DNA of 64,000 bases. Source: Macrostomum lignano. Taxonomy: Eukaryota. The position numbers were made by a program, and so were the translations under genes. Shown here one piece after another: positions 2,981 to 60,600 of this stretch; positions within the stretch are counted from its first letter, which is position 1, and every line of letters starts with the position of its first letter. The notes under the pieces are model-generated. The model was not told the DNA's origin. It searched no databases and was given only the letters and a program-made list of their open reading frames with translations. Location of the stretch: contig NIVC01002668.1 of assembly GCA_002269645.1 (NCBI GenBank), positions 62,001 to 126,000 of the forward strand, in the 5' to 3' direction.

Positions 2981-4715
2981 ATGGCTAGCAATTTTCATGA
3001 GGATGCCGTTGACTTTCTTGACGACTCACCGGCTTTGACCAGTGATAACAGCGCCAGCGAGTACGCAAGCATTGATGGCGAGGTGGATGAAGAAGATGGC
3101 CAGAGTGACGTGGAAGGCTCTCAGGTAGAAGAAGCTTTGATTGAAAATGGATGGAATTTCGTTCAGGAGGGCGAAGACTCGCGTCTCCGGGATGCGCCAG
3201 AATTCCTCGGAGTGCCCGGTCTGAACCCGGATCTATTAGCCCAAGCGCCGGAAAACACAATGACTCGGATCGAATTCTTCCTCTAGCACTTTATTACCTC
3301 TGATCTGGTGTCTGCCATTCGATTTTGGACCAATGCTCGAGCTGATTTCGAGCTCCAAAACATTGCAACTGAGGCTGATGGACCTCTTCCCCCCTTACTA
3401 TCATCTTGGAGACAATGCACCGAAAACGAAGTGAGGAAATGTCTCGCCATTGTCCTGTACATGGGTCTAGTGAAGAAGCCCGAATTGCACATGTATTGGT
3501 CGACTGGCGATTTCTACGGTGGTGAATATTTTCAAAAAGAGCATTGCCTCGGAAGGGATCGGTTCATTCAGATCTTGTCATTCCTCCGATTCTACGACTG
3601 CACCGCAGTAAATAATCACCAGGATTCCCTGAAGAAAATCAGGCCATTTTTAGACATTGCGCGATGGTATTTGCCAAGCCAACTACTGCCCGAATCAGGA
3701 CGTTTCAGTAGATGAAGAGTTGGTCATGTACAAAGGCAGACTCATTTTCCGACAGTTCATGCCCAACAAGCGCGCCAGGTTCGGCATAAAGGTCTACTGT
3801 CTCACAGAGGCTTCCACCGGATTTCTGTGGAACTTCCGTGTGCATGCTGTCAAGCAGGACAACGACAGGTTTGGAGAAGGAGTGAACTGCGGGAATTTAT
3901 CTTTCAGTGAAAAGATTGTTGTCGAGCTAAGCAAGGACTTGCTGGGCTTGGACTACCGGATCTACTGTGACAGCTGGTTCACGTCGCTTCGCCTAGCTCA
4001 GTTTCTGCTCGAACGTAATACCATGCTGACAGGAACCGTGAGAGTCGACCGAGGCATCCCCAACGAGCTAAAGGTGCTGGCACTGCAACCCATAAGTCAC
4101 TCTCACATGCGCCGAGACGATGTTCTTGCCGTCAAGCTCGTTGACAGAAAGGCCAGTGGTCGCAAAACTGTCTACCTTTTGGACACCCACGGCGTCGCTG
4201 GAAGCACGGAAGTGAGGCGAGTAATTCGAGGCGGCGTGGTGGAGACAGTTTTGAAGCCCAACTCATTGCTGCAGTACAACAAGAGTATGGGAGGCGTCGA
4301 TCGCCTTGACGCAGCGCTACAACCCTACAGTGCAGGAAGAAGGACGCACAGGTGGCACCAGAAGCTCGGGTTTCATATTTTGCTTCAGTTGGTGCGCAAT
4401 GCTTGGATTTGTTACTGCCATTCTGGCAACTGCATGAAGTTCTTAGACTTCTTGGAGGCCACGATCCGCCTTCTGATGGAGCAGACGGGTCGGGGAAAGC
4501 GGCAGAACACATCGAAGCGTCGAGCTGCCTCGCTGCATACCCCATCCAAACTACCACCGACAGAGGCCAATATGAGACCGACTAAGCGGTGCAGAGTCTA
4601 CTATGGAAACGGCTCGGTCAAGCGAACTGTCTACGTGTGCGATGCTTGCCCTGGAGAGCCTGGACTTTGCGCAGCCCCTTGCTTTCAGAGCTGGCACACT
4701 GCCGCGGGGAACTGA
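2981..4715 (+). mobile_element. piggyBac/PGBD4-like transposase, inactivated
   Basis: Three consecutive ORF pieces: an acidic N-terminus, an in-frame TAG at 3284-3286, and a frameshift near 3660. DDD motifs VDEEL, YCDSWFTS and GGVDRLD are present. The C-terminal Cys-rich domain is RCRVY..VCDACPGEPGLCAAPCFQSWH. No TTAA-flanked TIRs were found. Confidence 0.92.
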
Positions 4716-6101: not shown

Positions 6102-9100
6102 TCAGCTAATTTCCAACATTAGACGAATACTTCTCAGCATTGGTCTGATCACGTATACATAGTCAGCTGCGTAAAGCCACTGCATATTTCTCGAACTGTT
6201 CCATCTGCTGCCGATCTCCGACAAGTTAAAGTAGCCGTTTGGATTGACGTAGGTGCAGCTGTCGTACCACCATCCAGCGTTACTATTCTGTCTTGAGCAG
6301 CGAGAATTCGACCCCGAGTCCATTGTTGAGAAGGTCAGATTGTTGTTGTAGGAGAATGCGTCCTTAGAGGTGTTGGAGCTGCCGGGCAGGTAACCGCTGA
6401 CACTCAGCCTGTACCGCGTGCTGGCGCTGCCAACCGAGAAGTGAGAGTACTCGCACACGTACAGCTTGCCGTTCTGATGGTTGCGAGCTTCCATTCGAAA
6501 CAGGCGCGGCGTTGCGCCACTCAGACTGTGGATCTTCTGCAGGCCTGCAGTTGTATTAGTTGGTGATGTGGCGGCCCGAAAAGCATCCGACATTATTTTT
6601 TTTTATTAGAGGCAGGGGGGTTGTGTGCACCCTGGCGCACTTTAAGCGACATGGGCACACAACCGGCGAGAGGCATTGCTGCCCATTCCACCGACTCCCC
6701 TGAGCAGGCATACAAGCGCGCGGATACGTACGCAGGCACACACTCACACAGGAGTGTACAGCGGCCCTAACTTTATATTATCGTTAGGCATGTACACTTC
6801 ACTGCGCCTTGGGGGGTTGGCTCTCAAGGCCGTTAATTGCACGAGCAGAGCCAAGCGGAGATTCCAATTCAGCCCCAAATTAATGTAACTGCACTTGGAA
6901 TCGAGCCTGGGTCGCTGGCACACCAGAGCAGCCGCGCTACCGCTGGGCTACGGCCCCCCTAAGCATCCGACATACTCGAAATACAAGACAATACATGTAG
7001 CTGTGTGCTGGGAGTTCCCCACTTTCTAAGCGATTCACTTAGCTGTGAAGAGATTGACTAGCTACTTAATCCGTTGAGCACCCTCCCCTAGTTCTCTCTC
7101 GTGACTCTTTCAACAGTATACTCACATATCTATACCATGCGTCCACCCTGGACCCTGGACCCACCTATCCATCAATCAATTCATCAACTCCAGGGGCGCA
7201 ACCAGGGGGGGGGCCTTTAGGCGGAGACCCAAAAAAATCGAAGGGGGGACCAAGCGAATTTTCGCAAAAAACAGAGCCACCCCTCCGCCCCCCCCCCCGG
7301 GACTTTACCCTCCAGAATCCCACCCTCAAAAAATTTCTGTTTGAATTCATCCATTCATTCACTTACTCATCTATCTATCAATTCGTCCACCAAAGGACCA
7401 AATGAAAACTGAATACTACGGACGGTCACAAATTCAGAAATCTCTTCGGTCGCCTATAACTGACCATCGGTCTCGTCTAACACTCGACCTACTGACATAA
7501 TAAAAACTTCTAAAATTTTTCGCAAGGCTTTGCTTAAAGTTTTTCGACTCACGCTAAACAACTGGCCCGACGCCACTCACCGATCCAGAAGTCAATATCG
7601 TCACCGAAGCCAGTCTCGTACTCAGTCCAGTTTCGCTGAAAACTCACTTTATCGGTGAGTCGCTGCTGAATTATTGTGAAACAACGACCGTCTCGCTTAA
7701 CTCGCTTAGCAAAGTCGGCTGTGCACAGCTCGGCCCGGGAACTGAGGCTGGAGCAGCTGGCTGCACTCCCAAGTGGTTTCATTCTCCATGATGAAGTGAT
7801 TCGGCTGGACTCGAAGAGGCACTGCTCAGCAACCAGCGATGTCACGCGCCACTGCACGTGTCGCCAGATATCAACAGGTTCCAAAAGAAGCACAGACCTG
7901 AAGTTGAACAATATTTTGCTAATAAAACTTTGAATCGACGTAAGAAATGGTCAAAAGACATATGAGCATTATGGAAAATCAAAGAGCTAAAATGGCAAAA
8001 GTCTTGCAATGTCATAAATGCCTTGCGTAAGAGGGCGATCCTTTGTGCGAATTTAATCCAAAGCATAAGAAACTGTGGGACAGAATCAGCCAGCTGCTAG
8101 AAGTTGATGAAACAGTGAATTCCCACCTGTCTCAGTGGTGGTGGATAGTTGCCTGCAGCGTTAGCAGCAGCACCTCCAATACTGTTTTGGTTGTACAGGA
8201 CTTATTGCATATGCTTCCAACTTCTTGCTATTGATCTTGTGATAGAAACTGTTGGGTGACTACACTCCTAGCTCATAAAAAACGTATTACAGAAGAATAC
8301 GACTCCCTAAACTGAAGGACTCACTTGATGTTTTTCGATAGCATAACTAATTCAGAAGCTGAAAGGACCAATTTGAATTTTGGATGCTTGATAAACTTGC
8401 AAACTTTAGGAGCGTTCACTGCGTCATCGAATAAAATAATCACACATTTTGTGCAAAATGACGACAGTATTTTTATGTCATGCGAGCAGGCAGAATAGTG
8501 AACTGCTGCTAAAAAGCGCTCAGAAATTATATACTAATAACGCATTCGCAAAAACCGAAACCGAAATTTCAAAGGGGATGTCAACTTAAGCACCAGAATG
8601 GAGCCCGAAGTTCAGCTCCGGACCAAACCGACTGCAATCGATAACTTGTCGGCCCAGACGACTAGAATCGCCGAGACATCCCATCCGGCTCCCTTCCTTG
8701 GGGTCCCAGGGGATAAAGGGGATAAAATGGGGATCTCATGTCAACTTAAGGCTCTGGAATGGAGCTCGAAGTTCAGCTCCGGACCAAACCGACTGCAATC
8801 GATAACTTGTCGGCCCAGACGACTAGAATCGCCAAGACATCCCATCCGGCTCCCTTCCTTGGGGTCCCAGGGGATAAAGGGGATAAAATGGGGATCTCAT
8901 GTCAACTTAAGGCTCTGGAATGGAGCCCGAAGTTCAGCTCCGGACCAAACCGACTGCAATCGATAACTTGTCGGCCCAGACGACTAGAATCGCCGAGACA
9001 TCCCATCCGGCTCCCTTCCTTGGGGTCCCAGGGGATAAAGGGGATAAAATGGGGATATCATGTCAACTTAAGGCTCTGGAATGGAGCCCGAAGTTCAGCT

Positions 9101-11205
9101 CCGGACCAAACCGACTGCAATCGATAACTTGTCGGCCCAGACGACTAGAATCGCAGAGACATCCGCTGTGCCACTATGTTCCGCTATGTCATTGAGTGCT
9201 GCTTTGCTGCCATTTAGCAGGACAAATGTGTTAACGAGAGGCACAAACCGTATCAGTGGCTGCCGTCAGCCGGCTTCAGTGAGCCCAGCCGATTAGACGT
9301 TGTTATCGAGACCTCGATGGCAAAGTACAACCGGGCGCAGTCGGTTTGGTCCGGAGCTGAACTTCGAGCTCCATTCCAGAGCCTTAAGTTGACATGAGAT
9401 CCCCATTTTATCCCCTTTATCCCCTGGGACCCCAAGGAAGGGAGCCGGATGGGATGTCTCGGCGATTCTAGTCGTCTGGGCCGACAAGTTATCGATTGCA
9501 GTCGGTTTGGTCCGGAGCTGAACTTCGGGCTCCATTCCAGAGCCTTAAGTTGACATGAGATCCCCATTTTATCCCCTTTATCCCCTGGGACCCAAGGAAG
9601 GGAGCCGGATGGGATGTCTCGGCGATTCTAGTCGTCTGGGCCGACAAGTTATCGATTGCAGTCGGTTTGGTCCGGAGCTGAACTTCGAGCTCCATTCCAG
9701 AGCCTTAAGTTGACATGAGATCCCCATTTTATCCCCTTTATCCCCTGGGACCCCAAGGAAGGGAGCCGGATGGGATGTCTCGGCGATTCTAGTCGTCTGG
9801 GCCGACAAGTTATCGATTGCAGTCGGTTTGGTCCGGAGCTGAACTTCGAGCTCCATTCCAGAGCCTTAAGTTGACATGAGATCCCCATTTTATCCCCTTT
9901 ATCCCCTGGGACCCCAAGGAAGGGAGCCGGATGGGATGTCTCGGCGATCCTAGTCGTCTGGGCCGACAAGTTATCGATTGCAGTCGGTTTGGTCCGGAGC
10001 TGAACTTCGGGCTCCATTCTGGTGCTTAAGTTGACATCCCCTTTCAAATTTCTTCATTTCAATGTCATAATATCATCAAACCTGAGTTCTCGGCACTGCA
10101 ATGATGTAGTGCAGAGCAGCCGCAGCTGAGCGGACCTCCAGTCTGCCGACACCATCAGCGGACCCACCTCGAACCGAGCACTCAACGAAGAGCTCACCGA
10201 TCTCTCAGCAGTCCACAGCCGCATGAAGTCGACCGAGAGAGGCGACAAGTCGGCCAACTGAGTCCTCACAGCATCGCGTGTGGCCTCATCTTGCAGTACC
10301 AGATCCAGCTTCAGGTAGTGCATGTCTCGGCTGTAGTCATACCTGACTGACTCGCTGCTCAAGCTGGAGATGTTGTGGCACAGCAGAGGCTCGATGAGGA
10401 AGTGGCCCTTCATGTCGAGTCTCTGGTGCACTCGGGCAGAGCAGTTCTCGAGATTGACGGTGCGGCTGAATTTCAGCTGTCGGCATGTCATCAGGGGTGA
10501 GAATCTTTGTGCGTTTATCTCTGAGTCGAGGAGGATGTCATTCTGCAGCCGGAGGCGACTCTGAACATCGTGGCAGGAGCCGTTTGCAATGATTGAAGCT
10601 GTTAGCTTCACTTTTTCAAGAGCTTCTCGGGGTGAATTTCTAAGGCCATCACTGTTCTTCTGACTGTACACGCATTGCATTGGAAGAATGTTTTCAATTA
10701 ACCATGTCTTTGGAACTCGACTTGAATTGTCCTCCGAGCTGATGTTTTTCAATCTGAGAGTGGCGACTGGCTCATCCGGAGTCCACAGGACGCCCAAAGC
10801 CCGAATCGATGAGCGGGTGTCGGCTGAGACGCTGATGTTGGTCACCGTGGCGAAGCTCACAGACCTCGGTGACAGATGCCGCAGTTGACGCTGAGCCTCT
10901 GCGAGCATCCCAGCGTCCCGCATCAATACAGGAACGCTGAAGTACAGCTGCTGGGTGATGAAGTCGAATCGGGGAGCAATGCCTACTAGGCTGTCCGTCA
11001 CGCACATGAGCGGCTCGACTGCCAAGTGCGGACCGTCGCTCTCTCCCGTGTCGTGCACGAACAGCGCGCAGCCGTTCACGCTGAGCTGCGCCACGAAGCG
11101 GAGCCGCGGAGAGTCAGCGGGAGCGCACTGGGAGACCTGGCCGGCTGCCAGCGAGCAGAGCAGCAGAGCCAGCAAAGTTTTGAAAAGCAAATTTAGTTGC
11201 TCCAT
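6102..11205 (-). CDS. FReD-1: secreted protein, signal peptide + two copies of an unrecognised domain + fibrinogen C-terminal domain (627 aa)
   Basis: Exons 11205..10082, 7897..7581 and 6544..6102 (1884 nt; intron phases 2 and 1 are consistent). Hydrophobic N-terminus LLALLLCSLAAG. FReD motifs IIQQR..VSFQRNWTEYETGFG..DFWIGL, FSTMD and GWWYDSC..VNPNG. Confidence 0.85.
6594..6960 (-). mobile_element. tRNA-derived SINE, family A, copy 1
   Basis: Minus-strand head with an A box (TAGCCCAGCGG) and a B box (GGCTCGATTCC), an A-rich tail, and a 13-bp TSD AAGCATCCGACAT (6581-6593 and 6961-6973). Confidence 0.88.
8574..10041. mobile_element. Foldback-type element with inverted arms built of 161-bp tandem repeats
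   Basis: Termini GGGGATGTCAACTTAAGCACCAGAATGGAG are inverted. About 3.7 forward units, a ~170-bp spacer and about 4.4 reverse units. 7-bp TSD TTTCAAA (8567-8573 and 10042-10048). Confidence 0.88.
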
Positions 11206-11619
11206 TATCTTTGTTCGTGAGAATTGAAGACTCTACAATCTGCTTTGTGTTTAAAGATGTGTAGAATTTTACAAACGCGTTTTAAAATAGGTTGAATTGC
11301 ACTTTATCTTTGCTGTTAGCATTCTTTTATTTATAATAGTCTGCAATTTAGAAATGCGTGACAAACGGGAACACTATAGAAAGTTTTGAATAAATAAATG
11401 CTCTATAATTAGGAAGAGACGCTTTAAAAACATATCTATTTTTAATCTGCAAGAGCTTCTGATTGCCTATTCAGATACAGGATGCTAATGCAGAATTTCA
11501 GCGCGATCAAGTTCAGGGGTTATTTTTATACTATCAAGTGAGCTTCGGCAGTCTCGAGACTAAACACCCTGGAGGCCGGGTCGAGCTATAGTTGATAAAA
11601 GGTGAAGGAGAATTCTGTT

Positions 11620-11712
11620 TACAGTGCTTACAGTGCTTCCAGTGCTTACAGTGCTTCCAGTGCTTACAGTGCTTCCAGTGCTTACAGTGCTTACAGTGCT
11701 TACAGTGCTTAA
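11620..11712. repeat. 9-bp tandem repeat (CAGTGCTTA/CAGTGCTTC)
   Basis: About 10 units visible directly. Confidence 0.85.
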
Positions 11713-12428
11713 AGTGCCTAAAGTACTAGCAGAGACTTTGAGGTTGCCCTTAGCTTCGCAATTCAACAACAGCTTCGAACCTAACTGCTACCTGCATGTA
11801 CTGACAGTGACGTATATCAAACTACAATTCATTGTCAGAGGATAAAAACAAGGCTAAATATTGTAAAATTTATTTACTATATGGCTGACTAATTTGATAT
11901 GAGAACTTTGTTGACAAAATAACTCAGAATTATCTTTATTCAATTATCGGACTTTCTAAATCCAATAGACTCAAAAGGCTACAGATCTTTATACTTAAAG
12001 ACGCGATTCACAAAATCTATGTGATGCAGCAGACATGGCTCTTAATTGTCTCTCTGTGCTCAAGCAGACTTTATCAGACTGAGTCTTCTAAGCATTTGGA
12101 CGAGTTTGACGCTTTTCAGATCAATTAAAAAAGCCTCACTCAATTGTTAGCACAGGACGCAGCAGTAGTGCAACTCGAGTATAGACATTATTCAATTTTA
12201 TTTAATCAATTTCTATTTATCAAAAATGACTTTTAAAAGACTTCTTAAAGTACAATGACCAATTAATTTGCTATTTTGAATCAGGCAAAAAAGAGATGAC
12301 GATTACTCAGTTAATCATAGAAAAATTTAATATATTAACAATGCAGATTAGATTAGATGCCGTCAGATTAAGAGATATTTAGACATTATTGCTGAGCATT
12401 TGTGAGAATTCATTTGTTTCTTTTCCTG

Positions 12429-14483
12429 TCAAATCTGGAGCAGCAGTCGTACTTGGCGAAGTGCCAGCCACCGGCGACGCGAAAACCAAGACATGTACAC
12501 ATCGTCCGAAGTCTCGCGGGTGGAAAAAATCCCGTTTGGGTTGAAGTGCATGCAGTTGTTGAACCACCAGCCACCTTTGCCGTAGCCGTCGGAGCACGAC
12601 TCACTGCGCCTGTCGTTGTCTGCGTCCATGGTGGAAAAACGCGACCGATTGTTGTGCTCCATGGCGTCCCAGCTGACGGTGGACCTCTCCGGCAGCATCT
12701 CTCGGTACGTCATCCGGTACCTGGAGCTGGCGTCGCCCACCTGGAATCCCGCGTACTCCGCATGCAACTCAGAGCCGTTCCACAGCCTCATCTCCACTCT
12801 GAGGGTGGCGCCACCTGTGCTTAGCAGACTAATTGCAGATAGACCTGAAAGTGCAACAAAGGCTACTGGAACTACAGCTTAGGCCTTATACAATTTCAGG
12901 ATGGATACATTTACTAAAATAACAAAAAACGAACCAATCCAAAAGTCGGTGTCGTGGCCAAAGCCAGTCTCGTATTCCGCCCACGTTCGCTGGAAGCTGA
13001 CGCTTCCACTCACCCTCTGCTGGATGGTCACGAACCATCTGCCGTCAGGTAAACTGCGAAACGTCTCGAAGGAAACAATTTTGGATCGCAATAGGCTGGG
13101 AATATTGCGGCAGGAGTTGTAGGTTGAGCAGGAAGGCGAACTGCCAATCGTTTTCATTCTCCAAGACAAAGATGCTTATGGGACATCAATAAGCACTGAT
13201 TCGCCACCAGAGAGGATGTCCGCCATTTTAGATGTCGCCACAAGTCAACAGGCTCCGACAGAGCAGAAAATCTAAAACAAGAGGCAATTTTCCTGTCATT
13301 CAATATGGACTAAAAAATTGCATTTAACTGCAGCGCCAACCTGGCAGCGCCACACTGGTTTAAGGACGAGCAGTACAGCCGCAGCTGAGCGGACCTCCAG
13401 TTTGCCGACACCATTAGCGGACCGACCTCGAACCGGGCACTCAACGAAGAGCTCACCGATCTCTCAGCAGTCCACAGCCGCATGAACTCCACTGAGAGAG
13501 GCGAAAAATCAGCCAGTTTAGTTCTCACAGTCTGAAGTGATGCTTCATCCTGCACTAAAAGGTTCAGCTTGAGATAATATTTGCCGCGGCTGAAGTCATA
13601 TCTGATTGACTCGCTGCTCAAGCTGGAGATGTTGTGGCACAGCAGAGGCTCGATAAGGAAGTGGCCCTTGATGTCGAGTCTCTGGTGCACTCGAACAGAG
13701 CAGTTCTCCAGACTGATGGAACGAATGAATCTCAGTTGTCGACATGAAGGCAGGGGACAGTACCTTAATCTGTACTCACTGGGGTCAAAGAAGGTGTGAT
13801 TTTGAGTCGATACTCGGTACTGGTAGGTCTGGTAGGTTCCGTTGAGAAAAAGCTTCGCCGATAAGCGAAGTCGTTGAAGGGATTCGACCGATGATAGCTG
13901 CAGTTCTGATCTGAGCAGGATGGTTCAGGTTTGTTCGAATCTTCACTATAATGATTTGTAAATATGAGCCAACCCAATTTTTCAAAACTTACGAGAGCTC
14001 ATATGCACTTCTGTCCATATCTGTTTCGATTCTTAGATCTCCAACGGACTCATGTGGACTCCAGATAAAAGCAATAGAACGAACAGTGGAGTTAGCATCT
14101 GTGGAAGCATTGACTTCTGACACAGCCGCAAAGGTCACAGACTTTGGTGATAGATGTTGCAGCTGACGCTGAGCTTCTGCCAGCATCCCATCATCCGTCA
14201 TCAACACAGGAATGCTCACGTACATCTGCTGCGTGATTAGATCCACTTTCGGACTCAGAGACTTTAAGCTTCGCGTCACGCACATGAGCGGCTCGACTGC
14301 CAAGTGCGGACCGTCGCTCGCTCCCGTGTCGTGCACGAACAGCGCGCAGCCGTTCACGCTGAGCTGCGCCACGAAGCGGAGCCGCGGAGAAGAGGCAGCG
14401 GGAGCGCACTGGGAGACCTGGCCGCTGACTCCCAGATAGAAGTACAGCAGTGACAGTGCTGCATTTTTGAGTGACATTTTCAT
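12429..14483 (-). pseudogene. FReD-2: paralogue of FReD-1 and FReD-3 with a 1-nt frameshift (pseudogene or assembly error)
   Basis: Exons 14483..13993, 13910..13341, 13271..12935 and 12844..12429 total 1814 nt, which is not a multiple of 3. Exon 3 is one base short near 13165-13175 relative to the paralogues, giving LCLGE*. The signal peptide, both N-terminal domains and the FReD (FSTMDADND, GGWWFNNCMHFNPNG) are otherwise intact. Confidence 0.75.
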
Positions 14484-15549: not shown

Positions 15550-18212
15550 TCATAACTGCACCATCAGCCGCACAAGCCGAATGGACATCCATCTGTCAGA
15601 GTGCCACAGCATGTACTTCAGGTTTATTGTCGGGCTGGTCGGGAACAGCCCATTTGGATTGAAATGGTAGCAGCTATTGAACCACCAGCCACCTCCGCCA
15701 TATGCATTGGAGCAGGACTTCCTACGGTCTCTGTCATTGTCCACATTGATGGTAGAAAACTGCATGCCTTTGTGGTACTGCATTGCATCGTGTTTGGCGT
15801 TAGACTTGTCCCTCAGCATCTCACGGTACGTCATCCGATACATGGAGCCGACGCCTTCAACTGTAAAGTTCGAGTACTCCGCGTACCACTCGGTGCCGTT
15901 CCACAGCTTCATCTCCACTCGAAGGGTGGCGCCGCCGTCGGTAAGCGAGGCAATTCTGTTCAGACCTGCAATGTCAATGAAGGGCGAATTCACGTTTGTT
16001 AATATTTGATTTGCTTTTTATGGGCTGGTGCGATTTGAAATGTTTAATAGTATTTAGAAGTATTGAAAGCACTGACAATATTTGAACGCTGAATTTCGCG
16101 TGTAGTTTCATTTTTACACTGGTAGCCCCTGGGACTCTTGCCGCGGCTAAGCCAAGATAAGTCTGACAAAAGGTTCTCAAAAGCAACTCAGATTTTATCA
16201 TACAGAAACAATAAAGAAAAACTTTTTAATGTTGAGACATCGTACCGATCCAGAAGTTGTTTTCATTCCCGAATCCGCGGATGTACGACGCCAGAGTGCG
16301 CCGAAAACTTTCCTCGGCCGAGACTCTCTGCTGTATAATGAAAAACCATCTGCCATCTGCGAGCCTTTTTAGCTTGCCAAAACTCAGGTCTCCACTCCGA
16401 GCAAGACTGCGAAGATAGGCGCAGCTTGCGGAGCGGCTGCAACTGATGGCGTCGGTGGAGCTTTCCGTTTTCCCAGAGGAGACGGTCGAGTCCGACTTGA
16501 AGAGGCAATCCGAATTAACAATTGACGTTGGATGCCAATTGATATGATACCAAAAAGCAAATGGATCCTTTGTCATTACATTGGACCTAAAATGTGTTGT
16601 AGTTTTATGGTTTTTTGTTTTAAAATACTAAAAAATTCGGAAATAATATACCTTTTTGCAATCAATTTCGTCGTTTTTGCATTCAATTTCGGCGCGAGCG
16701 CTAGTGTGCAGTCTAAACAACTGAGCCATAGACACTGGGCAACTTTTGCGTTCAAATTTGGCCTTTTTGCGTCCTATTTCGGCAGCTTACGGCATCAAAC
16801 ATATTTGCGGAGACGACTATAGGCCTGCTTTAGGAGACAAATTTTTCGTCCCACCCTCACTGAATGCGATCGAGTGAGAAAGTGTCTATGGCAAAAACAT
16901 TCGAACTGTGCCCACAGTGCGGCCCATGTGATTGCGCTGCCGAAATAGGACGCAAAAAGGCCGAATTTGAACGCAAAAGTTGCCCAGTGTCTATGGCTCA
17001 GTTGTTTGGACCGCACACTAGCGCTCGCGCCGAAATTGAACGCAAAAACGACGAAATTGATTGCAAAAAGGTATACTATAGAGGCAATAATTACTTCAGA
17101 TTGGTGCACTGTTTTATACTCCTGCAGTACAGCCGCAGCTGAGCGGACTTCCAGTCTGCCGACACCATCAGCGGACCGACCTCGAACCGAGAGCTCAACA
17201 AAGAGCTCACCGATCTCTCAACAGCCCACAGCCGCATAAACTCGACTGAGCGAGGCGACAATTCGGCCAGCTGTGTCCTCACGGCATCGAGTGTGGCCTC
17301 ATCTTGCAGCACGAGATCGAGTTTCAGGTAGTGCATGTTTCTGCCGTAGTCATATTCAACTGGTCCGTATGTTGACTTATCGACGCTCCAGAGTAGAGGC
17401 TCAATATAATAGGCACCCCTAGAATCGAGTCGCTGAAATACTCGAACTTGACGGTTTCTGTGGTGCATTAAAAGTACAAATTTAATGTCTGAGCAAGTTT
17501 CCAATTCGTATCTGGCACTTAAGAGAGACAGTTCCGTGAATCCGCGGTTTCGCGCCACTGGGCGCAGAGTGACTTGTCGAAATTTGCGATTTGATAAAAT
17601 GGTGGCCGTGAGTTGCACCTGGTCTAAGGCGTCGGTAGGCGACGTTTCTCGTCTAGAAATTGATTAGTTTAATATTGGTTTTGTCAAAAATTGCCAAAAA
17701 TATTTTTCTACCAAAAAGGACTCTAAATACACTCACTTCATCATCATCAGAGCCGCTTCTGTGTTATTTATTCCTATTTTTAGAACACCAGCCGAGTGAT
17801 TTGAACTCCACTCGAACCCAATAACGCTAGACTTGGTTGCCAAAGCTCCTATATTAGTGACAGTAGCGAAGCGAACGGGCTTTAGAGAAACGTTTCGCAG
17901 CTGCAGCCCAGCTTGGGCAAGCATGTGGGTATCCCATAGAAGCACCGGGACTCGGATGTACAAAATCTGCGAAATCAGATCGAGTTTCAAAGGCTGCTTT
18001 TCGATGGCACCAGTGACGCACATGATAGGCTCGATCTCCAGTGCATGCTCTCCCGAGTCGTATACAACCAGCGGACAGCCGCTCACGTTGAGCTGGGTCA
18101 CAAAGCGCGGCTTGGATGAGGCAGTTGGAGCTCTCTGAGGAAGCTGAGCAGCTACCAGCGAGCAGAAAATTAGAAGCAGTGCAGCCACTGCCACTTGGGC
18201 TGCGGAACTCAT
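15550..18212 (-). CDS. FReD-3: signal peptide + two unrecognised domains + fibrinogen C-terminal domain (596 aa)
   Basis: Exons 18212..17737, 17652..17095, 16586..16246 and 15965..15550 (1791 nt; phases 2, 2, 1; all GT-AG). Motifs FIIQQRVS..SFRR..YIRGFG..FWIGL, FSTINVDND and GGWWFNSCYHFNPNG. Confidence 0.88.
16649..17073. mobile_element. Tc1/mariner-type MITE in FReD-3 intron 2
   Basis: About 138-bp near-perfect TIRs (TACCTTTTTGCAATCAATTTCG...), flanked by TA on both sides. Confidence 0.85.
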
Positions 18213-20687: not shown

Positions 20688-23600
20688 ATGAAGCTGAAAG
20701 CCAAGCGGTCCGAGCCGCTGCAGCTGCTTCTGTGCCAGCTGCTCACGGGTGAGTCTGAATGGAAATGGTGCCACCTTGATGGAGACTCACTCACTGCTCA
20801 CTCACACTCCTTTCAGCTGTGGCCTCCGCCGTAGACCCCAGCGCCGTCACCAGAGGCTTCTACCATCGGGTGACCAGCGGCTTCATCGGCATCGGAAGCT
20901 ACGTGAGCAGCGAGCTGCTCAACGAGACGGGTGTTCGATCAGATGTTCTCTGCCTGTGGAAGTGCTGGGCAACGTCATGCGTTGTCGCAGTCGTCAAGGA
21001 AGCCGCGATCCTCGAATGCCAGGTGCTCGTCATCAACAATGCGAGCGAGCCGGGCTTGAGCAGCAGCAGCTTTGTTGCCAGGGAGATTCGGCTTGAGGAC
21101 GGCGTGCAGATCTGGAAGGCTGGCGACTTTGAGCAGCAGCTGCTCAGAGGCACCGACGCCGCGCGCCCACTCGGTGAGTTTGTGAAATTGGCTGATGGAG
21201 TTCATGATTCAGCATTCATGCAAACGCACCCGCATCATCTGATGCTTACTCAAAGCTCAGTTTTGAAGAAAGCTGTTTCAGCCTTAATTCCTATCGAATC
21301 CAACCCCGAATATCCATCTCACAGCGTACCTGGATTCTAAGAACGTGACTCACAAGCGGGTCCACATTCCCAACAACTCGGTGAAGATTATCGCCGCCTT
21401 TCTTCAGCACCAGTCGGCTGTCTCATCGCTCGTTGGCTGCGTTGACAAGTGCAGCGAGGTGCCGGACTGTCGCGGGATTGTGTTCAACTCCAGCAACTGC
21501 TCTCTGCTCACCGACTACCCGCTGTGCCGCTGGTTCGAGCAGCCTCCGAACAGCTCTGAGCTGGCCGTCTATGTGAGTGTTGGGAAAGGAAGCTTTTTGG
21601 CGTCACGTCACTGCTGAGTAAAGCATGTCTGCATTGATGACGATCGAGTTCCGGATGTTCCGGGTTCGGTTTCTGTGCCAGCGAGCAGTTTCTCTGAGCA
21701 GCTCAGCGGCTCGCGCGCCACGACCCTTGGGCCTTGGTTCGATTCTGTGTGCGGCCGCATTAATTTGGCCTTGTTCTCAGAAATTAGCTGAGGGGTCTTT
21801 TCTCTGATTTCCACACATGCCGGCCGACACTTCACAGACACATGCCGGCCGACACTTCACAGACACATGCGTGCCGACACTTCACAGACACATGCCGGCC
21901 GACACTTCACAGACACATGCGTGCCGACACTTCACAGACACATGCCGGCCGACACTTCACAGACACATGCGTGCCGACACTTCACAGACACATGCCGGCC
22001 GACACTTCACAGACACATGCGTGCCGACACTTCACAGACACATGCCGGCCGACACTTCACAGACACATGCGTGCCGACACTTCACAGACACATGCCGGCC
22101 GACATTTCACAGACACATGCCGGCCGACATTTCACAGACACATGCGTGACAGTTAGAAATTTAACAAGCCGCTTTTCATCCTGGACGTGTGCACGCGTGT
22201 TTGAGTGGCGTTCCTGCGTACACCATCTCTCAGTTTGAATGAATGTACGAGCTAAGGAGTCAGCAGTGTAACTGTCATACCAAGGACGAATTCAGTAGGA
22301 CGGGAAACCTCGTTTCTTGGAATAATTTTGAAGGCAGGTTTTTCAAAAAAATTCAGTGCGGAGACAGAAAGTTTTCATTTCTTAGCAAAAAAATTGTTAT
22401 TGCTTTAGATAGGAGGCAGATCCAGTGTTCATCTTTTGATATGCTGTTATTGCTGTTTTGTTTTTTTGTTTTTTCGCAATGTTGTTGGGGCTTCTGTCTC
22501 GGGCAAACTCGGTTCACTAAAGTTGCAGGAACGCATTCCACAGCCGGCGTCCGGCCTCCGGCTCTCGACAGAGGTCACTCAGGCTGGTCACGCCGAGTTG
22601 TCGCCGTACTCGGTTCAGGGCAGGGCAGCCTTGTTATTGCTGTCTTATTGCTCTATCGATATTCATAAAGCTTTTCGTTCAGAAAAATAGTTTTCTATGC
22701 CATTTTTCCACGTAAATTTGCACGTGTCTTGTGCCTAAAAACCATTAAAATGGCACAGCTCGGCTCTTTGGTTTTATTAGTGTATTTTGTTATTCTTATC
22801 TGACTGTTTAAATACGGAGTATGCTTAACAGAGATTATAAAATCGATTCAGAAAACCAAAAATTGGAGCTGTGCCAAGCATTTTTATGATTTTTAGGTAC
22901 AGGAAATGCACATAGAATAAGAAAAGAGCATAGAATCCTTTTTTTTAACGAAAAGCTTCAGAATATCGATAGAGCAACAAGAAAGACACAAAATATCAAA
23001 AGATGAACACTGGATCTGCCTCCTAACAAAAACGAAAACATTTTTTTCTGAAAAACCTGCTTTCAATTTTTTTTCAAGAAACGAGGCTTCCCGTCCTTTT
23101 ACTTGAGTCGTCCTTGAGTCATACATGTAGCTGCCTCAACGCTGCGGGACGTCCGATGCCACTGAAAGTGTTTGTTCAAGGATTCCACAAGTCTTATGCC
23201 AATAGTTATGTGAAAGTTGCTAGCAGTTAAAAATGCCTTTGTTGCATGAGTTTAATTTAAACAAGGCTGTAAAAGTATTTTGATTGCTTTCTGGATCAAC
23301 AGCTAACATCTCTGACAGTCCACATCGATTTCTATCACAAGAAAAATACTTTAAAGATTTCACGAAACCGCAAACTCAGGAGTTCCACACTGTGGGCACT
23401 CAGCAGTGCTTCCAGACCGTCAACCTGCGGGTGTCGGACGCGCTGAGCTTCGACCGGCTCTGGGCCGAGTACAAGGCCGGCTTCGGCACTTATCACGGCA
23501 ACTACTTTGCTGGTGAGTCACTTGGGGCTCTTTTACTTGAGTTTCTGGTCGTATGCGCACTGTGTTTTTCATAGAAGAAAGTAAGTATTATTTATTTTTC

Positions 23601-57600: not shown

Positions 57601-60600
57601 AACCCACTAAAAATCGCCCTCTGACCCCACTAAGAATCGCCCTCTGATCCCACTAAGAATCGCCCTCTGACCCCACTAAGAATCTCCCACTGACCCCACT
57701 AGAAATCGCCCCCTGACCCCAGTAAGAACCCCCTGACGCCACAAGGAATCGCCCCCTGACGCCACAAAGAATCGCCCCTGACTCCAATAAGAACCGCCCC
57801 CTGACCCCACTACGAATCGCCCCCCTCCCCCCTGACCCCATTAGGAATCGCCTTCTGGCCCCACAAAGAATCGCCCTCTGACCTCATCTTCGCATTGGCT
57901 GGCTTCACCCCGCTGCTCCTCCCCTCCCAGCCGAGTCCGTCATCTGCGAGGCGGCAGCGGCCGCGGCAGCCGAGGCCGCCGAAGCGGCAGCGGACGACCT
58001 GACCGTGGAGTTCCTGCACGACTGCAACCGCTGCACCGCCAACGCAGCCGCTGTAGCCGCGGCCGCCGCCGCCAATGCAGCCGCCAGCGACACCAACGGC
58101 AACAACGGCGGCAGCTGCTTCCGCCGCCTGTCGGCCTGCGGCAGCCCCGACGACAAGCAGCAGCAGCGAAACAATCACCACACCGACAACCAGCACAACG
58201 ATAGCGAGAAACCGAAGGACGCCGGCCCGGCCGCGGTGGCCGCCCAGGAATCCGAGCTCACCAGCCTGTCCACCAACGCCGCTTCCGCCGCCACCGACAG
58301 CGCTGTCGCGGGTAGCCGGGGCGGCCCCGCCGGCAGCACCGCCGCCGCTCTCAGCGTCACCTTCGACGATGACGTTGGCGGCAACGGAGACGACGCCGAC
58401 GAGAGCGAAGGCCGCGGGCACGGGCACGGGCATCACGGGCACTCGCACTCGCACACCACAGTCAGGGCGCTGGCCTGGACTGTCATCATTGGCGACGGGC
58501 TGCACAACTTCTGCGACGGTATGGCGCTTGGCGCGGCGTTCGCCGCCGATGTCGGCTCCGGGGTGTCCACCGCTGTGGCCGTCTTCTGTCACGAGCTGCC
58601 GCACGAGTTGGGCGACTTCGCCGTGCTGCTCCAGGCTGGCATGTCGGTGCGGATGGCCCTGCTGGCGAACCTGGTGTCCAGCCTGGTGTGCCTGCTTGGC
58701 ATGGTCTGTGGTGTGCTGCTCGCCAAGGGTGCCACCAACTGGGTGTTCATGGTGACCGCTGGCATGTTTCTGTACATTGCTCTGGTGGATATGGTGAGCA
58801 GTTCTCAGATCCTTTATAGCTTTAGGTTTGATTGAGGTTTTGATTGAGCTCATGTAGGTTTTGATTGAGCTCATGTAGGTTTTGATTGAGCTCATGTAGG
58901 TTTTGATTGAGCTCATGTAGGTTTTGATTGAGCTCATGTAGGTTTTGATTGAGCTCATGTAGGTTTTGATTGAGCTCATGTAGGTTTTGATTGAGCTCAT
59001 GTAGGTTTTGATTGAGCTCATGTAGGTTTTGATTGAGCTCAAGTAGGTTTTGATTGAGCTCATGTAGGTTTTGATTGAGCTCATGTAGGTTTTGATTGAG
59101 CTCATGTAGGTTTTGATTGAGCTCATGTAGGTTTTGATTCAGCTCATGTAGGTTTTGATTGAGATCATGTGGGTTTTGAAGCAGCTCATGTAGGTTTTGA
59201 AGCAGCTCATGTGGGTTTTGATTGAGCTCATGTAGGTTTTGATTGAGCTCATGTGGGTTTTGAAGCAGCTCATGTAGGTTTTGAAGCAGCTCATGTAGGT
59301 TTTGATTGAGCTCATGTAGGTTTTGATTGAGCTCATGTGGGTTTTGAAGCAGCTCATGTAGGTTTTGAAGCAGCTCATGTAGGTTTTGATTGAGCTCATG
59401 TAGGTTTTGAAGCAGCTCATGTAGGTTTTGAAGCAGCTCATGTAGGTTTTGATTGAGCTCATGTAGGTTTTGAAGCAGCTCATGTAGGTTTTGATTGAGT
59501 TCATGTGGGTTTTGAAGCAGCTCATGTAGGTTTTGATTGAGCTCATGTAGGTTTTGATTGAGCTCATGTGGGTTTTGAAGCAGCTCATGTAGGTTTTGAA
59601 GCAGCTCATGTAGGTTTTGAAGCAGCTCATGTAGGTTTTGATTGAGCTCATGTAGGTTTTGAAGCAGCTCATGTAGGTTTTGAAGCAGCTCATGTAGGTT
59701 TTGATTGAGCTCATGTAGGTTTTGATTGAGCTCATGTAGGTTTTGATTGAGCTCATGTAGGTTTTGATTGAGCTCATGTAGGTTTTGATTGAGCTCATGT
59801 GGGTTTTGAAGCAGCTCATGTAGGTTTTGAAGCAGCTCATGTAGGTTTTGATTGAGCTCATGTAGGTTTTGATTGAGCTCATGTGGGTTTTGAAGCAGCT
59901 CATGTAGGTTTTGAAGCAGCTCATGTAGGTTTTGATTGAGCTCATGTAGGTTTTGATTGAGCTCATGTAGGTTTTGAAGCAGCTCATGTAGGTTTTGATT
60001 GAGCTCATGTGGGTTTTGAAGCAGCTCATGTAGGTTTTGAAGCAGCTCATGTAGGTTTTGATTGAGCTCATGTAGGTTTTGAAGCAGCTCATGTAGGTTT
60101 TGATTGAGCTCATGTAGGTTTTAAAGCAGCTCATGTAGGTTTTGAAGCAGCTCATGTAGGTTTTGAAGCAGCTCATGTAGGTTTTGATTGAGCTCATGTA
60201 GGTTTTGAAGCAGCTCATGTAGGTTTTGATTGAGCTCATGTAGGTTTTGATTGAGCTCATGTGGGTTTTGAAGCAGCTCATGTAGGTTTTGATTGAGCTC
60301 ATGTAGGTTTTGAAGCAGCTCATGTAGGTTTTGATTGAGCTCATGTAGGTTTTGATTGAGCTCATGTGGGTTTTGAAGCAGCTCATGTAGGTTTTGATTG
60401 AGCTCATGTAGGTTTTGAAGCAGCTCATGTAGGTTTTGATTCAGCTCATGTAGGTTTTGATTGAGCTCATGTGGGTTTTGAAGCAGCTCATGTAGGTTTT
60501 GATTGAGCTCATGTAGGTTTTGATTGAGCTCATGTGGGTTTTGAAGCAGCTCATGTAGGTTTTGAAGCAGCTCATGTAGGTTTTGAAGCAGCTCATGTAG

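What the first reader, a model, noticed from the sequence alone, without database searches (positions are those of the whole stretch)
10095..11106. The novel N-terminus is an ancient internal duplication of one ~125-aa two-cysteine domain
Seen by manual alignment in FReD-1: A = LRFVAQLSVNGCALFVH..LAVEPLMC..RFDFITQQLYFSVPVLMRDAGMLAEAQRQLRHLSPRSVSF; B = LKFSRTVNLENCSARVH..FLIEPLLC..RYDYSRDMHYLKLDLVLQDEATRDAVRTQLADLSPLSVDF. Shared pattern: LxF-x6-C...VH...(I/V)EPLxC...xD...Y...L..D......L..LSP.SV.F. The same two repeats occur in FReD-2 and FReD-3; the first Cys of B is absent in FReD-3. Inference: a discrete folded module, probably with one disulphide, that can be defined as a new domain family.
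Basis: partly seen in the sequence, partly recalled or inferred. Interest (0 to 1): 0.75.

Follow-up and report, generated by a model that had tools for sequence, protein, structure and literature searches.

The report
Duplicated novel domain in flatworm lectins
The front half of three neighbouring flatworm (Macrostomum lignano) fibrinogen-type lectin genes is two copies of a previously undescribed, confidently foldable protein module of about 180 residues, which multiplies by duplication of one exon and also forms six-copy arrays in front of a C-type lectin domain.

Summary
In FReD-1 (minus-strand ORF 10054-11205) segments A and B align at 28% identity over 124 residues (BLASTP E=1e-10; shuffle z=16-22; profile-profile E=1.7e-9). 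The same pair occurs in FReD-2 and FReD-3.

The interpretation needs three corrections.
- **Unit size.** The unit is about 180 residues, not about 125. Two units tile the whole region between signal peptide and fibrinogen domain.
- **Cysteines.** The canonical unit has six cysteines. They are present or absent as three pairs: C1/C2, C3/C4 and, less strictly, C0/C5. FReD-3 B lacks both C1 and C2, not only the first.
- **Age.** "Ancient" holds only within this family. A and B units form separate groups across all two-unit relatives.

An HMM search of 1.84 billion representative proteins found the module only in M. lignano and three unnamed assemblies. It occurs once or twice before Fibrinogen_C and six times before Lectin_C.

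Every unit examined, except FReD-1 unit A, carries a phase-2 intron at the same position. This implies growth by tandem duplication of a symmetric exon.

AlphaFold models are confident (single unit pLDDT 94.4). There is no Pfam match, no PDB sequence match and no PDB fold match. One Medusavirus predicted protein matches at TM 0.55.

Function is inferred: a disulphide-stabilised stalk or accessory module of secreted lectins.

The parts
10082..11205 (-). FReD-1 exon 1. It holds the signal peptide (aa 1-22), unit A and most of unit B. It ends ...LQCREL + AG at the donor AG|GTTTGA (phase 2).
   Evidence: ORF list; tblastn with M. lignano paralogues; splice junction read; coordinates.
10543..11148 (-). 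FReD-1 unit A (aa 20-221). The C3/C4 cysteines are absent, and a stretch of about 21 aa specific to FReD-1-type genes, predicted disordered, sits in their place.
   Evidence: Unit HMM hit on aa 25-215, envelope 20-221; model residues 140-169 have pLDDT below 50.
10082..10524 (-). FReD-1 unit B, exon-1 part (aa 228-375).
   Evidence: Unit HMM hit on aa 232-412; the HMM built only from C-type-lectin units hits aa 242-404 with iE 4.4e-38.
7783..7897 (-). FReD-1 unit B, exon-2 part: helix alpha2 and the beta10-beta11 hairpin (SVLLLEPVDIWRHVQWRVTSLVAEQC...SSWR).
7581..7897 (-). FReD-1 exon 2: the end of unit B, a short linker and the first half of the fibrinogen-related domain.
   Evidence: tblastn; translation and splice sites.
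6102..6544 (-). FReD-1 exon 3: the second half of the fibrinogen-related domain. It is divergent: the usual FSTxDxDND motif reads FSTMDSGSNS.
   Evidence: tblastn; translation.
13796..14429 (-). FReD-2 unit A, with a phase-2 intron inside it (about 13911-13992; donor TC|GTAAGT).
   Evidence: P0013 is the annotated M. lignano protein for this gene (99% identity over exon 1).
13166..13783 (-). FReD-2 unit B, with a phase-2 intron inside it (donor AG|GTTGGC) at the position homologous to the intron of unit A.
   Evidence: The single-unit AlphaFold model (pLDDT 94.4) is of the P0013 form of this unit.
17541..18155 (-). FReD-3 unit A, with a phase-2 intron inside it (donor AA|GTGAGT).
16472..17534 (-). 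FReD-3 unit B, with a phase-2 intron inside it (donor AA|GTAATT). Both C1 and C2 are replaced (R and W).

Best explanation
The window is Macrostomum lignano DNA. It carries three tandem paralogous genes for secreted fibrinogen-related lectin-type proteins.

**What the region is (shown).** The region between the signal peptide and the fibrinogen domain consists of two adjoining copies (A, B) of one lineage-restricted module of about 180 residues. The predicted order of elements in each unit is beta1-beta5, helix alpha1, beta6-beta9, helix alpha2, then a beta10-beta11 hairpin.

**How units multiply (inferred from shown intron data).** Every unit examined, apart from FReD-1 unit A, is split by a phase-2 intron five residues after C4. 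Each internal exon therefore encodes the tail of one unit plus the body of the next, and is symmetric (2-2). Tandem duplication of that exon adds a unit without breaking the frame. This gives one or two units in front of a fibrinogen domain and six in front of a C-type lectin domain.

**Order of events (shown, unbootstrapped tree).** The A/B duplication predates the split of all two-unit family members.

**Function (inferred only).** The module is an extracellular, disulphide-stabilised stalk, spacer or accessory binding module that presents the C-terminal lectin head. It would play the part that IgSF domains play in snail FREPs.
For: **Organism and architecture.** All 21 close homologues are M. 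lignano Fibrinogen_C proteins. tblastn places the fibrinogen-domain exons downstream of each N-terminal region.

**Duplication.**

**Unit length.**
- The 183-column unit HMM tiles FReD-1 aa 20-221 and 228-413, and tiles six contiguous units in P0022 and P0035.
- An HMM built only from the C-type-lectin proteins reproduces the long boundaries in the FReDs.

**Fold.**
- The single-unit model has pLDDT 94.4 and pTM 0.86.
- The two-unit model has pLDDT 81.1 and pTM 0.69.
- Predicted secondary structure of A and B agrees at 79% of 169 aligned positions, against 23-50% for shifted controls.

**Cysteine co-occurrence over 69 distinct units.**
- C1/C2: both 55, only one 3, neither 11.
- C3/C4: both 50, only one 2, neither 17.
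- C0/C5: both 47, only C0 13, only C5 3, neither 6.

**Introns.** Phase-2 introns lie at HMM columns 145-148 in FReD-1 B, in FReD-2 A and FReD-3 A and B, and in all six units of the P0035 gene; the FReD-2 B junction was read directly from the DNA and aligns with that of unit A.

**Partner domains.** Lectin_C and Fibrinogen_C.

**Distribution.** There are 16 hits in 1.84 billion representatives. The credible ones are M. lignano proteins or come from three unnamed assemblies.

**Family tree.** A units and B units form separate groups.

**Selection.** dN/dS is below 1 wherever dS could be estimated.
Against: - No coordinates of the models were available, so A and B were not superposed and Cys-Cys distances were not measured. 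The disulphide pairing rests on co-occurrence among related, non-independent sequences.
- The unit-A copies in the window are degenerate. They have no C3/C4, and in FReD-1 an insertion with pLDDT below 50 sits there.
- FReD-1 unit A has no canonical intron at the conserved site.
- The alignments used for AlphaFold are shallow (18 and 28 rows) and mix A-type and B-type units. That could favour similar predictions for A and B.
- The neighbour-joining tree has no bootstrap.
- There is no expression, binding or localisation evidence for any function.
Confidence: 0.82

Rival explanations
1. One reading: a module of about 125 aa with two cysteines and one disulphide, with the two copies separated by a linker of about 80 aa.
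For: The strongest sequence similarity lies in this core (88-124 aligned columns). C1 and C2 do co-vary.
Against: - The 'linker' aligns to the segment after B and to the inter-core segments of the six-unit proteins.
- AlphaFold folds it as helix alpha2 plus a beta-hairpin within one confident body.
- Units abut without spacers in P0022 and P0035.
- Four more conserved cysteines exist.
Confidence: 0.1
2. The unit is not a new family. It is a strongly diverged copy, or a fusion of two subdomains, of known folds such as an Ig-like sandwich plus a ferredoxin-like or SEA-like alpha/beta domain, too diverged for sequence methods.
For: - The top PDB hits are two-domain Fab/Fc chains. LuxS and kinase N-lobes also appear. 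All are at E>0.01.
- A Medusavirus stheno predicted protein (A0A7S7YF07) matches at E=3.6e-4, probability 1.00, TM 0.55 over 188 columns. The fold is therefore not unique to flatworms.
Against: - No PDB chain reaches TM above 0.23 for the single unit, despite pLDDT 94.
- No Pfam family recurs among the 28 units even at E up to 10.
- The PDB profile search gives nothing.
Confidence: 0.25
3. The A-B similarity is chance, compositional bias, or the result of recent gene conversion between the two halves rather than an old duplication.
For: Patchy low dS between the paralogous genes shows that conversion does operate at this locus.
Against: - Shuffle z is 16-22 and E is 1e-10.
- A and B are only 28% identical.
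- A and B fall into separate groups that each contain all two-unit family members.
- The intron position and phase are shared.
Confidence: 0.02

Closest known systems
Biomphalaria glabrata FREPs (fibrinogen-related proteins with one or two N-terminal IgSF domains). Comparison from general knowledge and from the title and abstract of review PMC12074976 listed; the paper was not read.
   Same: Secreted proteins in lineage-expanded tandem gene families. One or two N-terminal non-lectin domains are followed by a C-terminal Fibrinogen_C domain.
   Different: Here the N-terminal modules are not IgSF. They have no Pfam hit, and Ig-type chains match at TM of only 0.11-0.23. The same module is also used six times in front of a C-type lectin domain. 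No immune role or somatic diversification has been shown here.
Ficolins, tachylectin-5 and angiopoietin-like proteins (other Fibrinogen_C lectins; general knowledge)
   Same: A C-terminal fibrinogen-related domain with the FSTxDxDND and GGWW...NPNG motifs in FReD-2 and FReD-3, preceded by an N-terminal non-lectin region.
   Different: Those proteins use collagen-like or coiled-coil regions for oligomerisation. Here the N-terminal region is a globular alpha/beta repeat.
Medusavirus stheno T3 uncharacterised protein A0A7S7YF07 (BFVD predicted structure)
   Same: It is the only fold match below E=0.001: E=3.6e-4, probability 1.00, TM 0.55 normalised to the query, 188 aligned columns.
   Different: Identity is 12%. 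The profile search did not find it. Its function is unknown. Both structures are predictions. I could not read its sequence or architecture.

Membership tests
Fibrinogen-related proteins (FReD/FREP) | C-terminal Fibrinogen_C domain (PF00147) | tested here: met
   Annotated paralogues, including the proteins for FReD-2 (P0013) and FReD-3 (P0018), hit PF00147 at E of about 1e-32 to 1e-35. The corresponding exons are in the window.
Fibrinogen-related proteins (FReD/FREP) | Secretion signal at the N-terminus | not tested
   A hydrophobic N-terminus (MEQLNLLFKTLLALLLCSLAAG|QVSQC) is visible in the sequence. No signal-peptide predictor was available.
Snail-type FREPs | N-terminal immunoglobulin-superfamily domains | tested here: not met
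   No Ig family in Pfam at E up to 10. Foldseek hits to Fab/Fc chains have TM 0.11-0.23 and E>0.01.
Internally duplicated (tandem repeat) domain | Statistically significant similarity between the copies | tested here: met
   BLASTP E=1e-10; shuffle z=16-22; hhalign E=1.7e-9.
Internally duplicated (tandem repeat) domain | The copies adopt the same structure | tested here: inconclusive
   Predicted secondary-structure elements correspond one to one, with 79% agreement against 23-50% for shifted controls.
Any described Pfam domain family | A hit above threshold, or a recurrent weak hit, across the members | tested here: not met
   The FReD-1 N-terminus has 0 families. Among the 28 units only four unrelated single-member hits appear, at E of 0.03 or more.
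Any experimentally solved fold (PDB) | Foldseek match at E of 0.001 or below, or TM of 0.5 or above | tested here: not met
   Best single-unit hit: E=0.042, TM at most 0.23. Two-unit model: E=0.011, TM at most 0.18. PDB profile search: nothing below E=1. AFDB was not available.
Disulphide-bonded extracellular module | Cysteines paired in space | not testable with these tools
   Only co-occurrence is available: C1/C2 55 both, 3 single, 11 neither; C3/C4 50, 2, 17; C0/C5 47, 16, 6.

The most novel reading that the evidence does not exclude
The unit of about 180 residues is a new extracellular fold. It has no solved relative, arose or was acquired in macrostomid flatworms, and is shared in shape with a giant-virus protein. 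It serves as a shuffled building block, through a symmetric phase-2 exon, for at least two kinds of lectin. It may act as a second, diversifying recognition surface rather than as an inert stalk.
Probability: 0.25. Interest if true: 0.65.

Novelty: new variant of a known kind. Interest (0 to 1): 0.5.

Why it matters
- **A definable new family.** This is a high-confidence domain family with no entry in Pfam or the PDB. It has boundaries, a cysteine pattern and a seed alignment of 28 diverse units.
- **A clean example of domain multiplication.** A conserved phase-2 intron sits out of register with the domain boundary, which explains arrays of one, two and six units.
- **Reuse across lectin types.** The same module was placed in front of two unrelated lectin heads, a fibrinogen-related domain and a C-type lectin domain.
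- **Relevance to flatworm biology.** It marks a lineage-specific family of secreted lectins. M. lignano is a laboratory model in which RNAi and in situ hybridisation are routine (general knowledge), so candidate roles such as immunity, adhesion or reproduction can be tested.

Tried and rejected
- **Word-indexed protein search with the 28-unit alignment.** It returned only one protein, P0017. It was uninformative, probably because of candidate retrieval.
- **Metagenome scans.** With the B-unit alignment A4, 45 pattern matches were found but none was confirmed.
- **PDB sequence search with the profile.** Only a chance hit at E=1.2.
- **Literature.** Three searches on Macrostomum, flatworms and fibrinogen-related proteins, plus one on gene identifiers, found nothing on these genes or this domain.
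- **Intron in FReD-1 unit A.** I looked for a canonical in-frame GT-AG intron at the conserved site and found none. Whether that stretch is an exonised intron or an insertion is open.
- **Model coordinates.** I checked whether model coordinates were readable for superposition. They were not.

Full report
**1. What is at the coordinates**

The interval 10095-11106 lies inside a 383-aa minus-strand ORF, 10054-11205. The ORF starts with a hydrophobic signal-like peptide. tblastn of this ORF against the window finds two further copies, at 13352-14456 and 17094-18170. Fibrinogen-domain exons lie downstream of each copy.

All 21 close database homologues are Macrostomum lignano proteins carrying Pfam Fibrinogen_C. 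P0013 is 99% identical to FReD-2 over its first exon, and P0018 is 100% identical to FReD-3 over its last exon. The window is therefore M. lignano DNA with three tandem paralogous genes on the minus strand.

The FReD-1 gene model is as follows:
- Exon 1: 10082-11205.
- An intron of about 2.2 kb, which contains two inverted arrays of a 161-bp repeat.
- Exon 2: about 7581-7897.
- Exon 3: about 6102-6544.

**2. The observation**

The quoted A and B peptides are present as written. Their similarity is well above chance:
- A versus B in FReD-1: 28% identity over 124 aa, BLASTP E=1e-10.
- A versus B in FReD-3: E=1e-4.
- Smith-Waterman scores lie 16-22 standard deviations above 2000 shuffles for FReD-1/-2 combinations, and 5.6-11.8 for combinations involving FReD-3.
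- An A profile against a B profile gives hhalign probability 96.3%, E=1.7e-9.

The six repeats align with 12 invariant columns. One correction is needed: FReD-3 B has lost both cysteines of the pair (N-R-Q for N-C-S, and PLLW for PLLC), not only the first.

**3. The family and the true unit**

I searched a profile of the six repeats against 1.84 billion representative proteins. It gave only 16 hits. The credible ones are M. lignano proteins plus three unnamed sequences:
- P0022, an RNA-type Logan contig from run SRR30276812.
- P0032, a short Logan contig from run SRR31628403.
- P0026, on a JGI metagenome contig.

Two low-complexity hits (P0031, P0033) look spurious.

The module occurs in three arrangements:
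- Once before Fibrinogen_C (P0027).
- Twice before Fibrinogen_C (FReD-1/-2/-3, P0024, P0025, P0029, P0030).
- Six times before a C-type lectin domain, with a period of about 195 aa and no spacers (P0022, 1462 aa; P0035/P0036, about 1436 aa).

P0022 and P0035 are collinear at 49% identity. The six-unit architecture is therefore conserved between species.

It runs through 'LRLxC-x5-C', a helix region, and a strand ending in another cysteine.

Two tests confirm the longer unit:
- A 183-column unit HMM tiles FReD-1 as aa 20-221 plus 228-413.
- As an independent check, an HMM built only from the twelve units of the C-type-lectin proteins hits the FReD B units over about 165 of its 188 positions (at most columns 7-181; iE about 1e-12 to 1e-38). 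It hits FReD-2 unit A over columns 6-172.

**4. Cysteines**

Six cysteine positions recur over 69 distinct units:

| Pair | Both present | Only one | Neither |
|---|---|---|---|
| C1/C2 | 55 | 3 | 11 |
| C3/C4 | 50 | 2 | 17 |
| C0/C5 | 47 | 16 (13 C0 only, 3 C5 only) | 6 |

The exceptions for C1/C2 include at least one clearly mis-modelled sequence (P0012).

This pattern is what three intradomain disulphides would produce: C1-C2, C3-C4 and C0-C5. It is inference, not proof, because the units are related to one another. The window's A units lack C3/C4. FReD-3 B lacks C1/C2.

**5. How the duplication happened**

The introns were read directly from the DNA:
- FReD-1 B, FReD-2 A and B, and FReD-3 A and B each have a phase-2 intron about five residues after C4 or the aligned residue.
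- The genomic locus of the six-unit gene P0035 (L004) has an intron at the same HMM column (145-148) in every unit. I read the junctions of four of these units, and all are phase 2. The three consecutive exons that each span a tail-plus-body segment are 576-675 nt long.

Each internal exon therefore encodes the last 37 or so residues of one unit plus the first 146 or so of the next. It is symmetric (2-2), so tandem duplication of this exon adds a unit in frame. FReD-1 unit A is the exception. It has an uninterrupted ORF and no canonical in-frame GT-AG at the site.

A neighbour-joining tree of 30 units puts all A units of two-unit proteins in one group and all B units in another. The units of P0022 and P0035 pair by position (no bootstrap). 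The A/B duplication thus predates the radiation of the two-unit family.

**6. Structure**

The single-unit model is of the FReD-2 B unit (186 aa, built from 28 aligned units). It has mean pLDDT 94.4 and pTM 0.86.

The two-unit model covers FReD-1 aa 20-413 and used 18 rows. It has pLDDT 81.1 and pTM 0.69. Unit B is mostly above 90. The only internal low-confidence segment is residues 140-169, the insertion specific to FReD-1-type genes where C3/C4 and the start of helix alpha2 would lie.

The predicted elements of A and B correspond one to one: beta1-5, alpha1, beta6-9, alpha2, beta10-11. They agree at 79% of 169 aligned positions, against 23-50% when B is shifted.

Fold and family searches gave the following:
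- Foldseek against the PDB gave nothing meaningful. The best single-unit hit is E=0.042 with TM at most 0.23. The best two-unit hit is E=0.011 with TM at most 0.18. Most are Fab/Fc chains at rmsd of 14 Å or more.
- Foldseek against predicted viral structures gave one real-looking match, an uncharacterised Medusavirus stheno protein: E=3.6e-4, probability 1.00, TM 0.55, 188 columns, 12% identity.
- Pfam gives no hit for the N-terminus or for any of the 28 units.
- A PDB profile search gives none.

**7. Selection**

Among the three window genes, dN/dS is below 1 in every region where dS could be estimated. Both units are therefore maintained as coding sequence.

dS is mosaic. The C-terminal half of the B core has dS of 0.17-0.36 in all three pairs, while most other regions are saturated (above 1). 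This points to patchy gene conversion between the tandem genes.

**8. Mechanism and function**

Shown:
- There is a duplicated, confidently predicted module of about 180 aa.
- Its intron structure is conserved.
- It is used in front of two kinds of lectin domain.
- Its taxonomic distribution is restricted.

Inferred:
- The three disulphides.
- The exon-duplication route.
- A role as a rigid extracellular stalk or accessory binding module that presents the lectin head. This is analogous to the IgSF domains of snail FREPs, but the module is not a member of that family.

No data on expression or binding were found.

**9. Verdict**

I rate novelty as a new variant of a known kind, namely lineage-specific multidomain lectins built on a domain that has not been described. 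Interest is moderate. Orphan domains in poorly studied phyla are not rare. This one is unusually well defined, has no solved structural relative, and shows a clear exon-level mechanism of repeat growth.

Noticed in passing
window 8578-9164 and 9337-10037: Two arrays of a 161-bp tandem repeat (3.7 and 4.4 copies, 97-98% matches) lie in inverted orientation inside intron 1 of FReD-1. They create many spurious ORFs of about 120 aa on both strands.
   Followed up: partly
window 10108-10284, and the homologous parts of FReD-2 and FReD-3: The C-terminal half of the B core has dS of only 0.17-0.36 between all three paralogues, while the rest of the genes is saturated (dS above 1). The N-half of the A core has dS 0.29 between FReD-1 and FReD-2. 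This suggests patchy gene conversion between the tandem genes.
   Followed up: partly
window 10640-10740 (FReD-1 unit A): The other units examined have a phase-2 intron at this site. FReD-1 instead reads straight through an extra stretch of about 21 aa with no canonical in-frame GT-AG. Annotated M. lignano paralogues differ here too (P0001 is long, P0002 short). It may be an exonised intron or an error in the gene models.
   Followed up: partly
window 6102-6544 (FReD-1 exon 3): The fibrinogen domain of FReD-1 is much more diverged than those of FReD-2 and FReD-3. The FSTxDxDND motif reads FSTMDSGSNS, so the usual calcium and ligand site may be altered. The role of the motif is from general knowledge.
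   Followed up: no
window 3657-4715 (+): A 352-aa ORF matches the piggyBac-type transposase domain DDE_Tnp_1_7 (E=2.3e-37, profile positions 118-349 only) plus its zinc finger. It is a truncated transposase remnant or exon.
   Followed up: partly
window 58005-58835 (+): An ORF with a ZIP zinc-transporter domain (PF02535, E=1.8e-37). It is part of an unrelated gene, flanked by long coding-looking tandem repeats on the opposite strand.
   Followed up: partly
window 23362-23535 (+): A short fibrinogen-domain-like fragment on the plus strand (36-43% identity to the FReD fibrinogen-domain exons). It may be a fourth, fragmentary family member.
   Followed up: no
L002 (JGI metagenome 3300040801, 1516-bp contig) 381-803 and 992-1438: An environmental contig carries an A-type and a B-type unit exon of a relative, closest to P0024 in the unit tree. 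The family therefore exists in at least one uncultured animal besides M. lignano.
   Followed up: partly
window 11619-11717, and many stretches between 27 and 63 kb: A 9-bp microsatellite (11 copies) lies about 400 bp upstream of the FReD-1 start codon. Long low-complexity tandem repeats with strong strand skew fill much of the right half of the window.
   Followed up: no
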